A DNA stretch of 62,033 nt, counting the filler, from Hausera hauseri (Eukaryota): assembly GCA_046269625.1 (NCBI GenBank). It is 12 parts of 12 records of this genome, joined end to end, with 100 filler letters (N's around TTAATTAATTAA, not from the genome) between each part and the next. Parts side by side here need not be neighbours in the genome. Positions count along the whole stretch, not along the records: positions 53,721 to 57,959 come from JBJURY010682107.1; 11 more parts are not named here. One strand, given 5' to 3'. The position numbers and the translations under genes were made by a program. Each line of letters opens with the position of its first letter. Position 1 is the stretch's first letter. The notes under the pieces are model-generated. The model saw only the letters and a program-made list of their open reading frames with translations, did not search any database and was not told the DNA's origin. Positions 54,143-57,959 of the stretch are shown here, piece by piece.

Positions 54143-54322
54143 TGTATAGATCCGTAGAGACGCTGTATATATGTATATATCTATTTTATGTGTATTATGT
54201 ATATAAATTATGTATTGATTATCAATTTGTAATTTTAAGTTTGAATATAACTTTTCTTGTGGATTTATTTCATCATTTCTTGGATTTATTTCAACCTAAT
54301 AAAACATACACTGGTGTCAGAA
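54143..54322 (+). mobile_element. Short LTR (TGTAT...ATACA, 168 bp, AATAAA at 54298) + tRNA-Leu PBS TGGTGTCAGAA (54312-54322)
   Basis: TG...CA with a 5-bp inverted repeat, poly(A) signal just inside the 3' end, 1-nt spacer, then the PBS. This is the standard 5'-LTR layout of gypsy elements. Confidence 0.7.
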
Positions 54323-54347
54323 CCATTGGAATTATTTTGCTAATTAT

Positions 54348-55860
54348 ATGCACATGAATGATCCTAAAACTGCAAATAGAATGACTTATCTCGATCGCAT
54401 CAAAGATGTTTGTCACTGTCGAAATTTGGAAAATATCATTTTAAAGTACCTTTATTCATTGGATGAGATCAGCGATCTGGTGAACAATGTTAACAAATTC
54501 TGTCTATTAGTGGGCGTTATTCAGTGCTTAATGGGTCTACTGCAGTTGGGATATTTGACACGGTATTTGTCAGATCCTCTCTTATCCGGATTTACCGTTG
54601 GTGCATCTGTCCATGTTTTAACGAGTCAGTTAAAATTTTGTTTTGGACTCAACTTCAAAACTATGCCAGGAAATTTTTATGTCGTAAAGACTATATATAA
54701 TATTTTCAAAAGTATTGATAAAACAAACACTCAAACTCTCGTTTTAACTCTATTGTGTATGGCTTTATTGTTCGTTAATAAAGAACTTATCAGTCCTCGA
54801 GTAGTCCCATTGATAAAAGCTCCAATTCCAATGGAACTTGTTGTGGTTGTTTTCTGTACACTTACATACTATTATTTAAAGCTTAATTGGAACCACAGTG
54901 TATTTGTTGTTGGAAAGATCGACCAAGGCCTTCCAATGCCAACTGTTCCAGATTTGAGTAATATTTCCAATTTCATTGGAGATGGAATTATTACGGCCGT
55001 GATTGCATTCTCAGTGTGTACATCATTGGCCAAAATATTTGGGAAAAAACATGGATATGTAACAAACGCAAATCAAGAACTGGTTGCATATGGACTAATG
55101 AATTTTGTATCGTCATTTTTCCTCTGTTACCGCGCTGCCGCATCTCAGTCGATCAGCAGTTCAAGAATCAGTTGGTGGTAAAACGCAATTATCTTCAATT
55201 ATTTCCTCTACTTTATTATTATTTGTTCTACTTTTTATCGGACCTTTATTTTGTACTTTGCCAAAAGTATTTGATATCAACAGTCTTGTGTGTGTATTTA
55301 TTTTGTTTAGTGTATTCTTTCATCGATCATAATTGTTGCATTGAAGGGAATGTTCATGCAATTTGATGAGTTAAAGGAACTTTGGCATTTTTCAATTTGG
55401 GATTTTGGAACTTAGATCATAACGTTTTTCATTATTGCATTTATTAGTGTGGAAATTGGTTTAATTGCCGGTGTTGCACTTTCCATTTCAACAGTGATGT
55501 TTCGAACTCACAGTCCAAATTCACACATTTTAGGGCAAATCGATGGAACGGATATCTACAAAAATGTTGATGTTTCTGAAAAGTGCCAAGAAATTGAAGG
55601 AATAAAAATATTTCGATTCGAAGGAAGCTTGTATTATGAATCCTGTGAACATTTTCGAAAAACGTTATTTACAAAAGTATCATGTGATCCCAGAAAGGTT
55701 AAATATTATATTTCTAAGTACGAGAACAAAATCAGGAAATTGGACGATTCAATCGGAAAGTTGAATAACCAGTATGACGTGGAGATTACCGATGCGCCTA
55801 ATCAGAAATATCCTCGACCGAAAAATTTGAAATTTCCAAGAAATTTAATGGTACTAAAGA
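54348..55860 (+). pseudogene. SLC26 (SulP/prestin-like) anion transporter, internally deleted, with part of the STAS domain
   Basis: LLVGVIQ...LGYLTRYLSDPLLSGFTVGASVHVLTSQLK; PIPMEL; NQELVAYG; LSRSAVQESVGGKTQ; IFRFEGSLYY. The first TM helices are missing; frameshift near 55150; TAG near 55413; retained 44-bp intron 55267-55310. Confidence 0.92.
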
Positions 55861-55864
55861 AAGA

Positions 55865-57226
55865 TGCAGTGTTAGATTATGTATATATTCGAAAACAGTT
55901 TGGATCATGGATATCGTGAAATCGTTAGTTGAAAAGCCTGATTTAGAAGAAATTACTAAAGTCACCGATATAAGTAACGTCATTATACCCACTGTAGCAA
56001 CAGTTCGTCAGAGATATTTCCTAGAACGATTAAAAGTTGGTAAAAGGCCTTTTTATTTGTGGGTGCTACTGGCACCGGAAAATCGGCAGTAACAAAGGCA
56101 TTTCTAACATATTTTTTACCAGATTCCCAATTCCTGTCTCATACATTTACATTCTCGGCTCAAACGTCCGCTGATCAAGTACAAGACAGTTTCTTTCCTA
56201 AACTTGACAGAAGAAAGAGAGGCTTATACAAACCTCAAGATAAAACACTAGTCATATTTGTTGATGATCTCAGTATGCCGGTTAAAGAAAAGTGCGATGC
56301 CCAGCCTCCTGTCGAAATACTCCGACAACTTTTAGATCACGGTCACTGGTTTGACAGGAAAGATAATTCTGTTTTGTATCTAGAAAATTTGTTATTTTGC
56401 AGTGCAATGGCTGTACCGAATTCTAGTCGCCCGGCTCTTACATCCCGGCTATTGAGACATTTCAATTTGATTGCAATTGATAAACTAAATGACGAAGAAA
56501 TGGGAGGCATATTTCAGCAAGTTATGGATTGGCATTTTAACTCCGGCTTTGATATAACTTTGAAAAGACTGTCTAAAGTCAAAGTCCATGCAACGTCTGA
56601 AATTTATCGATCCGTTGTTACACAATTTTTAGCGACACCATCCAAATCCCATTACTATTCAATTTACGAGATTTCAACAGAGTGATCCTCGGATGCCTAT
56701 TACTAAAGCCAGCAGCGGTTAAAAATTATCGCAGGAAGACTCTTATTCCAAATTGATTAAATGATGGGTCAATGAATCGTACAGGGTGTCAATGACCGAT
56801 TGGTTAACGATATGGACTGCGAAGAATTTTTTACGTGGGTTAAAAATGTCATCGAAGAAAGACAAAGAAAAGGTCCATATTCTTTTTGGTTATATAACTG
56901 GCGATGCCGGAAAACGACCATCAAATGCTGACATAAAAAAGTTAATTTTTGGCCATTTTCTTCGGCCTAAAAGGGATCCCAGTGAAATAATTAGTGGGAA
57001 CAAAGCTAAACAAGGAAATGTATCATTCGAGAAGCTCTATATCGAAATAACTGATGAAGAAGCCTTGTTTCAAACGGTTCAATATTATTTGGATGAATAC
57101 AATTTGATGAGCAAAGCTCCAATGGATTTAGTCTTGTTTCGGTTAGCTATTCAGCATATTGCACGATTATGTCGAATGTTGCGACAGTCTGGTGGATACT
57201 GTCTTTTAATAGGAATCGGAGGAAGA
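55865..57226 (+). pseudogene. Axonemal dynein heavy chain fragment (AAA3 to start of AAA4), frameshifted
   Basis: IIPTVATVR; GATGTGKS; FSAQTSA; FVDDLSMP...AQPPVEILRQ; RLLRHFN; TPSKSHY; MDLVLF..AI.HIARL.R.LRQ.GG..LLIGIGG. Confidence 0.93.
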
Positions 57227-57394
57227 TTACTTTATGCCGGGATTTCCATAAGCAACATCATTCAGAAGGATTTTTGTATTGATGGTTTCTTAGGATTGCT
57301 GTGGTTTCAGACACGGCTACCTTCTTACGCTTCACAGTTTATCGAGATGTGCGTAATGGTTACTGCAGATCATGGTCCCGCAGTTTCTGGTGCA
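57227..57394 (+). pseudogene. ACLY: ATP-citrate lyase fragment (56 codons)
   Basis: LLYAG...[35 protein letters not shown] matches ACLY LIYAG...[33 protein letters not shown]. Confidence 0.92.
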
Positions 57395-57959
57395 TTTGAT
57401 TCTACGGAGATTGATGAAGTGGCTAATCTGAACAATACCGATGACTATCTAGAACTACTTTACGAAAATATTCCGGATAAATTAAGAGCATCGTCTCTCG
57501 TACTACATTTAACTCGTTATCCAGACAATTTGGAAGAGCTATACGATAACGGTATACTCGTCGATGCCTTAGCAAGAGTTCTACGGGAAAACTGGAAACA
57601 AAGTACGGATCTGGCCACTAATATCATTTACATTTTTTTCTGTTTCTCATCTTTCACTGATTTTCATCAAATAATTATTCATCTAAAAATAGGTACGTTG
57701 ACGATGAATATCATTGATCATGAACTGAAAAAGTATGACATGTGTCTCGATGAATTACAAAAGAAAAAGGCTGAATAGAACAAAGAAATGGAGAAGACTG
57801 CTAAAAAATTCGAAACGATGACTCGAAAACAGGTACAGCTGTTTAGAGTATTTTATTATATGCTACTGAATGTTGCCGAGGATATCAATTTGGAAATCAA
57901 AATGCTCAGCAAAAGTCTAGTTGAAATTCTATCGAAAAGCTCAGAAAGAAAAAACCAAC
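57395..57959 (+). pseudogene. KIFAP3: Kinesin-associated protein 3 (KAP3) fragment, one in-frame stop
   Basis: [25 protein letters not shown]...PDNLEEL...[30 protein letters not shown]...LLNVAED. Confidence 0.93.

What the first reader, a model, noticed from the sequence alone, without database searches (positions are those of the whole stretch)
54143..57959. LTR + PBS followed by a four-gene, same-strand, frame-preserving host chimera (SLC26-dynein-ACLY-KIFAP3)
Seen: a 168-bp TGTAT...ATACA unit with AATAAA and a tRNA-Leu PBS. About 25 nt later come pieces of four unrelated host genes, all sense and abutted with no spacer or splice signals. All three junctions read through in frame (ORF 55449-55919 joins STAS to dynein; ORF 56786-57778 joins dynein, ACLY and KAP3), roughly 1/27 by chance; the SLC26-dynein junction is the least precisely placed. 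No gag/pol follows the PBS. Known: gypsy RT can template-switch onto co-packaged host RNAs (LTR-mediated retroduplication). Inference: a non-autonomous LTR element that serially captures and concatenates host transcript fragments, with a bias to open frames. One 44-bp intron is retained, so the template was partly unspliced or DNA. Scattered stops and frameshifts suggest later decay.
Basis: partly seen in the sequence, partly recalled or inferred. Interest (0 to 1): 0.88.

Follow-up and report, generated by a model that had tools for sequence, protein, structure and literature searches.

The report
Decayed multi-gene chimeric retrocopy mosaic
This stretch of a probably flatworm genome is a dead patchwork of pieces of five unrelated host genes, fused head-to-tail and almost free of introns, most likely stitched together by a retrotransposon's reverse transcriptase jumping between messenger RNAs; this kind of event is already known, but this case has unusually many parent genes.

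Summary
The core observation is real. On the + strand lie internal fragments of SLC26 (54492-55799), a DNAH3-like dynein heavy chain (55800-57223), ACLY (57224-57394) and KAP3 (57389-57959+). They abut directly, and all three junctions are locally in frame. A 44-nt GT..AG intron (55267-55310) is retained.

It also missed a very high-copy retroelement fragment on the minus strand at the left end.

Evidence for the LTR is thin. The 168-bp unit is 22% GC with six TGTAT starts and no second copy. However, 54312-54322 exactly complements the last 11 nt of tRNA-Leu(CAA).

The fragment ends lie inside exons. Introns that other animals have in KAP3 and ACLY are absent. Every piece is cut at both ends. 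This favours RNA copy-choice by a retroviral-type reverse transcriptase (Tan et al. 2016) over LINE chimeras or DNA capture.

Contigs from one public run cross two junctions. They also show several diverged copies, more numerous toward KAP3. The window's copy is a pseudogene.

Verdict: a new member of a known kind, of moderate interest. A 3' LTR, target-site duplication and parental loci could not be tested.

The parts
53721..53921 (-). Fragment of a very high-copy repeat, probably the protease region of an LTR retrotransposon, cut off at about 53921. It is not part of the host-gene chimera.
   Evidence: Summed contig depth is about 150,000-480,000, against about 5 for single-copy stretches. 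Loose ends at 53909 and 53921 show that the genomic consensus continues differently from the window. My translation of that consensus on the minus strand reads ...LLDSGAS, a retropepsin motif (inference). The ORF is listed, and Pfam gave no hit.
53999..54118 (+). EF-2 fragment (eEF2 residues about 36-75). It is a fifth host-gene piece, on the same strand as the others but upstream of the proposed LTR.
   Evidence: phmmer against PDB eEF2 chains, E 4.6e-11, query aa 22-61 matched to eEF2 36-75. Pfam GTP_EFTU was weak.
54143..54310 (+). It may be an LTR or only its R-U5 part, and its left boundary is uncertain.
   Evidence: It is 22% GC, has six TGTAT starts but only one ATACA, contains the tandem TGTATATTA x4.8, and has no second copy in the piece. 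Summed depth is about 146, so it is multi-copy. One contig breaks away at 54110, which hints at a repeat boundary there.
54312..54322 (+). Primer-binding-site-like 11-mer, complementary to the 3' end of tRNA-Leu(CAA). It lies 1 nt after the ...ACATACA end.
   Evidence: It is the exact complement of the last 11 nt of tRNA-Leu-CAA-2-1 as printed in PMC10359600; complementarity is lost from nt 12. There is a single occurrence, and 11 of 100 shuffles gave a hit at up to 1 mismatch.
54323..54491 (+). Unassigned 169 nt. It is either element leader or the poorly conserved SLC26 loop before TM4. The leader/SLC26 junction lies somewhere in this stretch.
   Evidence: No Pfam or PDB homology was found for ORF aa 1-48.
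54492..55799 (+). SLC26 anion-transporter fragment (about prestin residue 183 to the middle of STAS). It is a pseudogene with a frameshift near 55143, a retained intron and a TAG stop at 55413.
   Evidence: Pfam Sulfate_transp E 3e-56; prestin 183-400 E 4e-57; prestin 484-586 E 6e-19; frames.
55267..55310 (+). Retained 44-nt GT..AG intron, phase 0, inside the SLC26 fragment.
   Evidence: Removing it gives one continuous frame reading ...LPK|CILSSIIIVALKGMF.... X1 contig 3 (55102-55751) also retains it.
55800..57223 (+). Axonemal dynein heavy-chain fragment (DNAH3-like, residues about 1987-2444: end of AAA2, all of AAA3, start of AAA4). It carries several frameshifts and a stop at 56762.
   Evidence: AAA_7 E 2e-46 and AAA_8 E 1e-7; DNAH3 2371-2444 E 2e-17; a weak colinear match to DNAH3 1987-2023 (E about 1); frames.
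57224..57394 (+). ATP-citrate lyase fragment (human residues about 850-910). It is 57 codons long and both of its ends lie inside exons.
   Evidence: ACLY chains E 2e-19, query aa 144-206 matched to 848-910. ORFs of other animals read through both ends of the piece.
57389..57394 (+). GGTGCA (Gly-Ala), shared by the end of ACLY (..VSGA) and the start of KAP3 (..PGA FDSTEI). It is a candidate microhomology at the switch point.
   Evidence: Trematode KAP3 proteins read [11 protein letters not shown] and ACLY reads AVSGAHNT.
57389..57959 (+). Kinesin-associated protein 3 fragment (residues about 119-310). It has a TAG stop at 57776 and runs off the end of the piece.
   Evidence: KAP3 E 7.5e-50, residues 119-245; Pfam KAP positions 110-235 and 249-303. 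It spans conserved intron positions without any intron.

Best explanation
This is a decayed copy of a chimeric retrocopy. A reverse transcriptase copied part of a KAP3 mRNA. It then switched template, inside exons, to an ACLY mRNA, then to a dynein heavy-chain mRNA, then to a partly spliced SLC26 transcript. That produced one cDNA in which all pieces are sense and directly abutted.

The most likely enzyme is a retroviral-type RT working inside the particle of an LTR retrotransposon. The last switch would have returned to the element's own RNA just downstream of its tRNA-Leu primer-binding site (LTR-mediated retroposition, Tan et al. 2016).

The product behaves, or behaved, as a non-autonomous element. 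Parts of it exist in several to tens of diverged copies, with more copies toward the 3' (KAP3) side.

The copy in the window is a pseudogene.

Shown here: the fragments, their order, strand and local frames; the retained intron; junctions that lie inside exons; the absence of introns found in other animals; the 11-nt PBS complementarity; that contigs cross two junctions; and that the sequence is multi-copy.

Inferred: the RNA intermediate, the LTR-type RT, the direction and order of the switches, and mobility.
For: 1. map five internal gene fragments on one strand with no spacers. A single ORF spans dynein, ACLY and KAP3.
2. There is only one intron (44 nt) in about 3.6 kb of coding sequence.
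3. More than 60 exon-limited ORFs from other animals delimit a ~67-aa KAP3 exon whose two borders are uninterrupted in the window.
4. Trematode gene models skip a KAP3 block, which implies two further introns that are absent here.
5. Some animals have an ACLY intron at LLWFQR|RLP that is absent here.
6. Both ends of the ACLY piece and the KAP3 start lie inside exons of other species, so the joins are not splice products.
7. All pieces are cut at both ends. Tan et al. list this as typical of LTR-mediated retrocopies, and it contradicts feature (i) of LINE chimeras.
8. A Gly-Ala codon pair is shared at the ACLY/KAP3 junction, a candidate 6-nt microhomology. The median in Tan et al. is 6 bp.
9. 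An 11-nt exact complement of the tRNA-Leu-CAA 3' end lies 1 nt after a ...CA end, on the cargo's strand and 5' of it.
10. X1 contigs with no mismatches span 54276-54450 (unit end, PBS and downstream) and 57115-57383 (the dynein/ACLY junction). Up to 10 distinct contigs lie at one KAP3 position, and summed depth rises from about 5 to about 420 toward the 3' end.
11. Where the copies differ, the other copies carry the conserved residue, for example at 57335, 57512, 57518, 57590, 56294 and 56632. The window's copy is therefore the decayed one.
Against: 1. There is no second copy of the 168-bp unit, and no PPT or target-site duplication, because the piece ends inside KAP3. The unit's ends are not distinctive in 22% GC sequence.
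2. AATAAA sits only 8 nt from the unit's end, which would leave almost no U5.
3. An EF-2 fragment on the same strand lies upstream of the supposed 5' LTR. The simple model does not predict this. It needs a tandem array with a shared LTR (as described for TRIMs), a longer LTR, or an aberrant strong-stop transfer.
4. PBS significance is modest, and this organism's own tRNA was not seen.
5. The parental loci of this genome were not available. Intron loss is therefore judged only against other animals, and microhomology only at the protein level.
6. The retained intron leaves open a DNA template for SLC26. No more intact SLC26 copy at 90% identity or above was seen in X1.
7. The depth figures are summed contig means, not copy numbers.
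Confidence: 0.48

Rival explanations
1. This is a LINE-mediated chimeric retropseudogene. During target-primed reverse transcription a non-LTR retrotransposon RT jumped repeatedly between mRNAs. Copies were then 5'-truncated, which gives the rising copy number toward the 3' end. The LTR-end/PBS would be just another copied or neighbouring fragment.
For: The pieces are directly fused in the same transcriptional orientation, as defined for LINE chimeras. Summed depth rises steadily toward the 3' end, as with 5'-truncated retrocopies. The sequence is almost intronless. EF-2 and the LTR/PBS could be further pieces of one long switch series.
Against: LINE chimeras have full-length 5' parts and switch at template 5' ends. 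Here every piece, including a 57-codon ACLY piece, is cut internally at both ends. No poly(A) or A-rich tract lies at any junction. An RNA copy of an LTR element should start at R, so whether the 168-bp unit could be RNA-derived depends on an unproven R-U5 reading. The 3' end, poly(A) and target-site duplication are beyond the piece.
Confidence: 0.15
2. This is a DNA-level patchwork. Genomic fragments were captured and concatenated by a Helitron, by a Pack-TIR-type gap-filling or FoSTeST process, or by end-joining of filler DNA at a break. Segmental duplication then amplified the result.
For: A genuine intron is retained in SLC26. The EF-2 match is preceded by ...tatag, which could be a 3' splice site (weak). 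Microhomology-guided template switching also occurs in DNA-level capture. The mosaic includes a transposon fragment in the opposite orientation.
Against: At least four intron positions present in other animals' KAP3 and ACLY are absent. About 1.4 kb of dynein coding sequence has no intron. All five host pieces are sense (p = 1/16 if orientation were random). No terminal inverted repeats were found, the best inverted pair being 27 nt at 70%, and no Helitron-like hairpin or CTRR end was noticed. DNA capture typically carries exons together with introns.
Confidence: 0.2
3. This is an assembly, amplification or library chimera that does not exist as such in the genome.
For: The piece is short (4.2 kb) and ends in repeats. 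The window has single-base deletions relative to all X1 contigs at 55917 and 56041, three of four such sites being homopolymer-length differences, so the assembly may contain indel errors. No listed contig spans the whole piece, and bridging of the ~55800 and 57394 junctions was not shown in the listed records.
Against: Independent contigs from run X1 cross the dynein/ACLY junction (269 nt, no mismatch, depth 12) and the unit-end/PBS/downstream boundary (175 nt, no mismatch). Depth is continuous across all junction bins. Diverged copies at 90-99% identity exist, which is not expected of a one-off artefact. X1 may be the source sample, so this support is not fully independent.
Confidence: 0.05

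Closest known systems
LTR-mediated chimeric retrocopies of animals (Tan et al. 2016, Genome Res, PMC5131818), e.g. CG4799_CG11924_r carried by the Pao element BATUMI in Drosophila
   Same: Both show partial mRNA copies, more than one parental gene fused, switch points with short microsimilarity, location next to LTR-retrotransposon sequence, and the capacity for further rounds of retroposition.
   Different: Here there are four contiguous parents (five with EF-2) rather than two. Only a possible 5' LTR end and PBS are seen, with no element ORF remnants and no 3' LTR. Microsimilarity was inferred only at one junction and only from proteins. The host is probably a flatworm, a group not covered in that study.
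[quoted passage not shown]
   Same: Both are non-autonomous LTR elements whose interior is a fusion of exon-only fragments from several host genes, in one orientation and partly in one reading frame.
   Different: Bs1 has both LTRs and is expressed as a hybrid protein. Here the LTR pair is unproven and the copy studied is a pseudogene. One intron is retained.
TRIM / LARD non-autonomous LTR elements, including tandemly arrayed TRIMs (PMC4717578) and animal TRIMs (PMC6934838)
   Same: Both have a very short terminal repeat (about 170-200 bp), a PBS and no gag/pol. TRIMs occasionally capture exon-only host fragments. Tandem arrays with shared LTRs would explain host cargo on both sides of the repeat.
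   Different: TRIMs are defined as shorter than 1,500 bp, whereas the cargo here exceeds 3.6 kb. Complete copies with different target-site duplications were not shown.
LINE-type bi- and tripartite chimeric retrogenes (U6-L1, MINE; Buzdin/Gogvadze, PMC2104539)
   Same: Both are direct fusions of copies of different transcripts in the same orientation, made by RT template switching, and more than one switch per event is possible.
   Different: Those have full-length 5' parts, 5'-truncated 3' parts (usually a LINE) and 10-20 bp direct repeats. Here all parts are internal fragments and no LINE part or poly(A) is seen.
Helitron and Pack-MULE / Pack-TIR gene-fragment capture (PMC8277862)
   Same: Both give mosaics of fragments of several host genes, often in one orientation, and multi-copy families.
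   Different: That capture happens at the DNA level and carries introns, and the elements have defined termini (TIRs or Helitron ends). Here the introns are almost all missing and no such termini are seen in the piece.

Membership tests
LTR-mediated retrocopy (Tan et al. 2016) | The host sequence is a partial, intron-less copy of an mRNA | tested here: inconclusive
   There is one 44-nt intron in about 3.6 kb of CDS. Introns present in other animals' KAP3 and ACLY are absent. This species' own parental genes were not available.
LTR-mediated retrocopy (Tan et al. 2016) | LTR-retrotransposon sequence flanks the copy on both sides (5' and 3' LTR coexist) | tested here: inconclusive
   On the 5' side there is a ...CA end, 1 nt, then an 11-nt tRNA-Leu PBS, but the LTR itself is unproven. 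The 3' side lies beyond the end of the piece.
LTR-mediated retrocopy (Tan et al. 2016) | Microsimilarity at the switch points (median 6 bp) | tested here: inconclusive
   The ACLY/KAP3 junction shares Gly-Ala (GGTGCA, 57389-57394) between the two parents at the protein level. The other junctions could not be assessed without the parental DNA.
LTR-mediated retrocopy (Tan et al. 2016) | May combine several parental genes, and the product can undergo secondary retroposition | tested here: met
   Four contiguous parents are present. Several diverged copies at 90-99% identity exist, with up to 10 contigs at one position. That retroposition produced the extra copies is an inference.
LTR retrotransposon (structural definition) | Two near-identical terminal direct repeats with TG..CA ends | tested here: not met
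   The piece holds no second copy of the 168-bp unit; the longest direct repeat is 22 nt. The 3' end of any element would lie beyond 57959, so this is 'not met within the piece', not a demonstration of absence.
LTR retrotransposon (structural definition) | A primer-binding site complementary to a tRNA 3' end directly after the 5' LTR | tested here: met
   54312-54322 exactly complements the last 11 nt of tRNA-Leu-CAA (PMC10359600) and lies 1 nt after ...ACATACA. The chance level is modest.
LTR retrotransposon (structural definition) | A polypurine tract before the 3' LTR, and a target-site duplication | not testable with these tools
   The piece ends inside KAP3 at 57959. The 20 nt before 54143 are only 60% purine, so there is no PPT there that would support a shared-LTR tandem array.
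TRIM | Element shorter than 1,500 bp, without retrotransposon proteins, with at least 2 complete copies having different target-site duplications (PMC4717578) | tested here: not met
   The interior is already longer than 3.6 kb (54311-57959). No retroelement proteins are present. The copies and their target-site duplications could not be examined.
LINE-type chimeric retrogene (PMC2104539) | The 5' part is a full-length copy of a cellular RNA and the 3' part is a 5'-truncated RNA, usually a LINE | tested here: not met
   All parts are internal fragments: SLC26 about 183-600, DNAH3 about 1987-2444, ACLY about 850-910, KAP3 from about 119. No LINE sequence was found.
LINE-type chimeric retrogene (PMC2104539) | Parts are directly joined in the same transcriptional orientation | tested here: met
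LINE-type chimeric retrogene (PMC2104539) | Flanking 10-20 bp direct repeats and a 3' poly(A) | not testable with these tools
   The 3' end lies outside the piece.
Helitron / Pack-TIR capture | Defined termini (TIRs, or 5'-TC ... hairpin-CTRR-3') enclose the cargo | tested here: inconclusive
   No convincing inverted repeats were found (best 27 nt at 70%) and no Helitron-like end was noticed. Both true ends may lie outside the piece.
Helitron / Pack-TIR capture | Captured genomic DNA keeps the parental introns | tested here: inconclusive
   One intron is kept. At least four intron positions known from other animals are absent. The parents of this species were not seen.

The most novel reading that the evidence does not exclude
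The family is an active or recently active non-autonomous LTR element that grows by adding new host coding fragments at the 5' end of its cargo, next to the PBS, and preferentially in frame. One possible reason is that microhomology between coding sequences with shared codon usage is longest in phase. Less decayed copies would then carry one long translatable SLC26-dynein-ACLY-KAP3 reading frame. Two observations do not exclude this. The four single-base insertions seen in X1 contigs at 55917, 56041, 56655 and 56720 would put all the dynein ORF pieces into one frame. P0160 reads through the window's stop at 57776.
Probability: 0.12. Interest if true: 0.7.

Novelty: new member of a known kind. 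Interest (0 to 1): 0.42.

Why it matters
Reverse-transcriptase template switching is one of the few known ways to fuse pieces of unrelated genes in a single step, a form of exon or domain shuffling. Animal examples described so far mostly join two parents. A mosaic of four contiguous parents, joined in frame inside exons, amplified to several copies, and found in a probably flatworm genome, would extend the documented range of this process. If the less decayed copies could be recovered, it would also offer a natural series (KAP3 alone, then ACLY-KAP3, then dynein-ACLY-KAP3, then SLC26-...) for studying how such elements accrete cargo. The copy in the window is itself dead and has no evident function.

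Tried and rejected
1. I looked for other copies of the chimera among predicted proteins.
- The 330-aa junction ORF against 5.8 billion proteins found no protein sharing two parts.
- A 101-aa piece spanning both ACLY junctions gave the same result.
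- The exhaustive search of 1.84 billion representatives gave the same result.
- P0098, which seemed to cover more of the query, is plain ACLY with a spurious extension.

2. P0160 is 87% identical and sits on an 1125-nt JGI metagenome contig.
- P0160 has no close kin in the collection.

4. Rfam found no family in the piece, so there is no tRNA-derived SINE, ribozyme or other known RNA.

5. A splice-mediated origin of the junctions (exon shuffling or trans-splicing) was rejected. The ACLY and KAP3 breakpoints lie inside exons of other animals.

6. Purifying selection on the copies is not supported.
- Of the listed differences, 11 are synonymous and 21 non-synonymous (p = 0.23 against neutral).
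- Second codon positions are under-represented (15/3/14, p = 0.016), as expected if some of the compared contigs are the functional parents.

7. AATAAA as a polyadenylation signal was not accepted. It lies 8 nt from the unit's end in 22% GC sequence.

8. A PPT before the unit, which would support a shared-LTR tandem array, was not found.

The ORF pieces were searched apart by reference. The two SLC26 exons were joined only inside a script, to check frame continuity.

Full report
WHAT IS THERE

The piece (53721-57959, 35.8% GC) was read in full and all ORFs were listed.
- **SLC26 anion transporter:** Sulfate_transp E 3e-56; prestin residues 183-400 at nt ~54501-55157; the last transmembrane helix and STAS, prestin 484-586, in ORF 55449-55919.
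- **Axonemal dynein heavy chain:** AAA_7 (AAA3) E 2e-46 and the start of AAA_8 (AAA4). The best solved relative is DNAH3, residues 2371-2444.
- **ATP-citrate lyase:** human residues 848-910, E 2e-19.
- **Kinesin-associated protein 3:** residues 119-245, E 7.5e-50. It continues in the last ORF to Pfam KAP position 303.

JUNCTIONS

The single ORF 56786-57778 carries the dynein, ACLY and KAP3 matches at aa 80-153, 144-206 and 202-328. Both of those junctions are therefore in frame and have no spacer. By residue mapping they lie at 57223/57224 and within 57389-57394.

The SLC26/dynein junction is not at 55862. The STAS match fades by aa ~117 of ORF 55449. A weak (E about 1) but colinear match to DNAH3 1987-2023 begins at aa 21 of window:55740-55916, which is nt 55800. 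The summed contig depth also steps up in that bin. Both sides are in the same frame, so all three junctions are locally in frame.

DECAY

The SLC26 part has a frameshift near 55143, a TAG stop at 55413 and a retained intron. The intron is 55267-55310, 44 nt, GT..AG. Removing it joins ...LPK to CILSSIIIVALKGMF... in one frame.

The dynein part is split over ORFs in three frames and has a stop at 56762. KAP3 has a TAG stop at 57776.

Upstream of the proposed LTR, on the same strand, lies a fifth host fragment: eEF2 residues 36-75 at 53999-54118 (E 4.6e-11).

Further left, 53721-53921 on the minus strand belongs to an extremely abundant repeat. Its summed contig depth is 150,000-480,000, against about 5 for single-copy stretches. 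The genomic consensus runs on beyond 53921 where the window diverges (loose ends). Translated on the minus strand, that consensus reads ...LLDSGAS, a retropepsin motif. That reading is my inference, and Pfam gave no hit. The host-gene mosaic is therefore not neatly 'LTR, PBS, then cargo'.

THE 'LTR' AND THE PBS

The 168-bp unit is 22% GC, contains a TGTATATTA tandem and six TGTAT starts, and has no second copy in the piece. Its TGTAT...ATACA ends and its AATAAA, which sits 8 nt from the end, carry little weight.

The PBS is better supported. 54312-54322 is the exact complement of the last 11 nt of tRNA-Leu-CAA as printed in PMC10359600. It sits 1 nt after ...ACATACA, on the cargo's strand and 5' of it. 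Complementarity stops at nt 12. In 100 shuffles of the whole source, 11 gave a hit at up to 1 mismatch, so this is suggestive but not decisive, and the organism's own tRNA was not seen.

Detectable SLC26 homology begins about 170 nt after the PBS, not about 25 nt after it. The intervening 169 nt could be element leader or the variable SLC26 loop.

The unit region has a summed depth of about 146, and one contig breaks away at 54110. Both fit a repeat with a left boundary near the end of EF-2.

RNA OR DNA TEMPLATE

The parental loci of this genome could not be reached, so the test is indirect.

In the exhaustive protein search, dozens of short ORFs from fragmentary assemblies of other animals match only aa ~257-329 of the junction ORF. 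More than 60 such ORFs cover the same ~67 residues of P0160. They delimit a conserved KAP3 exon, and the window has no intron at either border.

Trematode gene models (Trichobilharzia, Opisthorchis) skip the block ETLVGAL...HFKI. That implies two further introns, which are absent here.

In ACLY, ORFs of some animals carry read-through intron sequence at LLWFQR|RLP, where the window is continuous.

Together with 1.4 kb of uninterrupted dynein coding sequence, this makes one intron in about 3.6 kb of coding sequence from four gene families that are intron-rich in most animals. I judge an RNA intermediate about three times as likely as DNA capture. The retained 44-nt intron would then mean a partly spliced SLC26 transcript.

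The same alignments show that other species' ORFs read straight through both ends of the ACLY piece and through the KAP3 start. The joins therefore lie inside exons and were not made by splicing.

WHICH REVERSE TRANSCRIPTASE

LINE-type chimeras are defined by full-length 5' parts and 5'-truncated 3' parts, the same orientation, and flanking direct repeats (PMC2104539). Here every part is an internal fragment cut at both ends, including a 57-codon piece of ACLY.

LTR-mediated retroposition (PMC5131818) lists exactly these properties: partial mRNA copies, several parental genes, microsimilarity at switch points (median 6 bp), and secondary retroposition.

One junction can be examined. KAP3 of trematodes reads ...ADPGA|FDSTEI and ACLY reads ...AVSGA|HNT. 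The Gly-Ala pair (GGTGCA, 57389-57394) is therefore common to both parents, a candidate 6-nt microhomology. Shared dipeptides encoded with shared codons would also give an innocent reason why switch points between coding sequences tend to be in phase. That last point is speculation.

IS IT REAL, AND IS IT REPEATED

One public run (X1, held as contigs, kind not on record) holds 64% of the sampled words. It may be the source sample, so its support is not fully independent.
- Contigs with no mismatches span 54276-54450 (unit end, PBS and downstream) and 57115-57383 (the dynein/ACLY junction, depth 12).
- A 650-nt contig (55102-55751, 11 mismatches, no gaps) keeps both the intron and the frameshift.
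- All 30 bins are covered. The listed records do not show bridging of the ~55800 and 57394 junctions, and only one call was allowed.
- Of the 2,199 contigs laid, 956 are 95-99% and 633 are 90-95% alike (most of them on the left-end repeat), and up to 10 distinct contigs lie at one KAP3 position.
- Summed depth is about 4-23 over SLC26, about 18-54 over dynein, about 71-109 over ACLY and 5' KAP3, and about 150-420 over 3' KAP3.

Depth here is a sum of contig means, not a copy number. Even so, the picture is of a family whose 3' parts are more numerous than its 5' parts. That is the pattern expected either from stepwise addition of cargo next to the PBS or from 5' truncation.

Against the stepwise reading, no more intact SLC26 sequence of 90% identity or above was seen.

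THE OTHER COPIES

All X1 contigs carry an extra G after 55917 and an extra A after 56041. Most carry an extra G after 56655, and one carries an extra A after 56720. These four insertions are exactly what would put the four dynein ORF pieces into one frame. Three of them are homopolymer-length differences, so some may be assembly errors in the window. For 56655 and 56720, a window-like contig of depth about 7 exists, so those two are real.

Among 32 listed substitutions in the ORFs, 11 are synonymous and 21 non-synonymous, which is not different from neutral (p = 0.23). Second codon positions are depleted (15/3/14, p = 0.016).

Where orthologues allow a call, the other copies carry the conserved residue: Q>K at 57335, T>A at 57512, Y>N at 57518, N>D at 57590. 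By my recollection of dynein consensus, the same holds for C>Y at 56294 and A>P at 56632. The window's copy is therefore a decayed member of the family. Whether the others are parents or less decayed chimeras is unknown.

P0160, from a JGI metagenome contig, is 87% identical. It shares lineage-specific residues and reads through the window's stop at 57776.

HOST

The nearest full-length KAP3 proteins are those of Schistosoma spindale (70% identity), Trichobilharzia and Opisthorchis, and the motif GAFDSTEI is shared with them. The source is probably a flatworm, but not one of these species.

COMPARISON WITH WHAT IS KNOWN, AND VERDICT

The locus works like the LTR-mediated chimeric retrocopies of Tan et al. 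2016 and like maize Bs1. Its short terminal unit with a PBS recalls TRIM/LARD elements. Tandemly arrayed TRIMs with shared LTRs would explain host cargo on both sides of the unit, but no PPT precedes the unit, and the interior is too long for a TRIM.

Membership in any LTR class is not proven, because the 3' half lies beyond the piece. It fails the first defining feature of LINE chimeras. It lacks the termini and the introns expected of Helitron or Pack-TIR capture, within the limits of the piece.

I rate it a new member of a known kind. It is notable for the number of parents and for the nested multi-copy pattern.

My confidences are 0.48 for the LTR-type reading, 0.15 for the LINE type, 0.20 for DNA-level capture and 0.05 for an artefact.

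TOOLS THAT WERE CLOSED OR EXHAUSTED

Noticed in passing
window 53721-53921 (minus strand): This is a fragment of an extraordinarily abundant repeat, with summed contig depth of 150,000-480,000 in run X1 against about 5 for single-copy sequence. The genomic consensus continues past 53921 and, translated, reads ...LLDSGAS (retropepsin). It is probably the dominant LTR retrotransposon of this genome.
   Followed up: partly
window 53999-54118: An EF-2 fragment (residues 36-75) lies on the same strand as the other host pieces but upstream of the proposed LTR. The 77 nt before it (53922-53998) and the 24 nt after it are unassigned. The bin containing it has a summed depth of about 550, so this piece is itself repeated.
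   Followed up: partly
window 57831-57882: Two X1 contigs (depth 11 and 32) carry a 49-nt skip with one replacing base, a net in-frame loss of 16 KAP3 codons. This marks a deletion-bearing subfamily of copies.
   Followed up: no
P0160 (JGI metagenome contig of 1125 nt; not fetched): A 100-aa ORF from an environmental metagenome is 87% identical to the window's KAP3 part. It has no intron across two positions that are split in other animals, and it is open where the window has a stop. It is either the parent gene of a close relative or a less decayed family member.
   Followed up: partly
window 55917, 56041, 56655, 56720: X1 contigs carry single-base insertions relative to the window at these sites, three of them in homopolymers. 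Together they would place all the dynein ORF pieces in one frame. Some may be indel errors of the window's assembly.
   Followed up: partly
L001 (metagenome contig Ga0157363_1008042, 5001-5300): This is a distant KAP3 relative (39% identity) on a 10-kb eukaryotic contig in a metagenome. It is unrelated to the finding.
   Followed up: no
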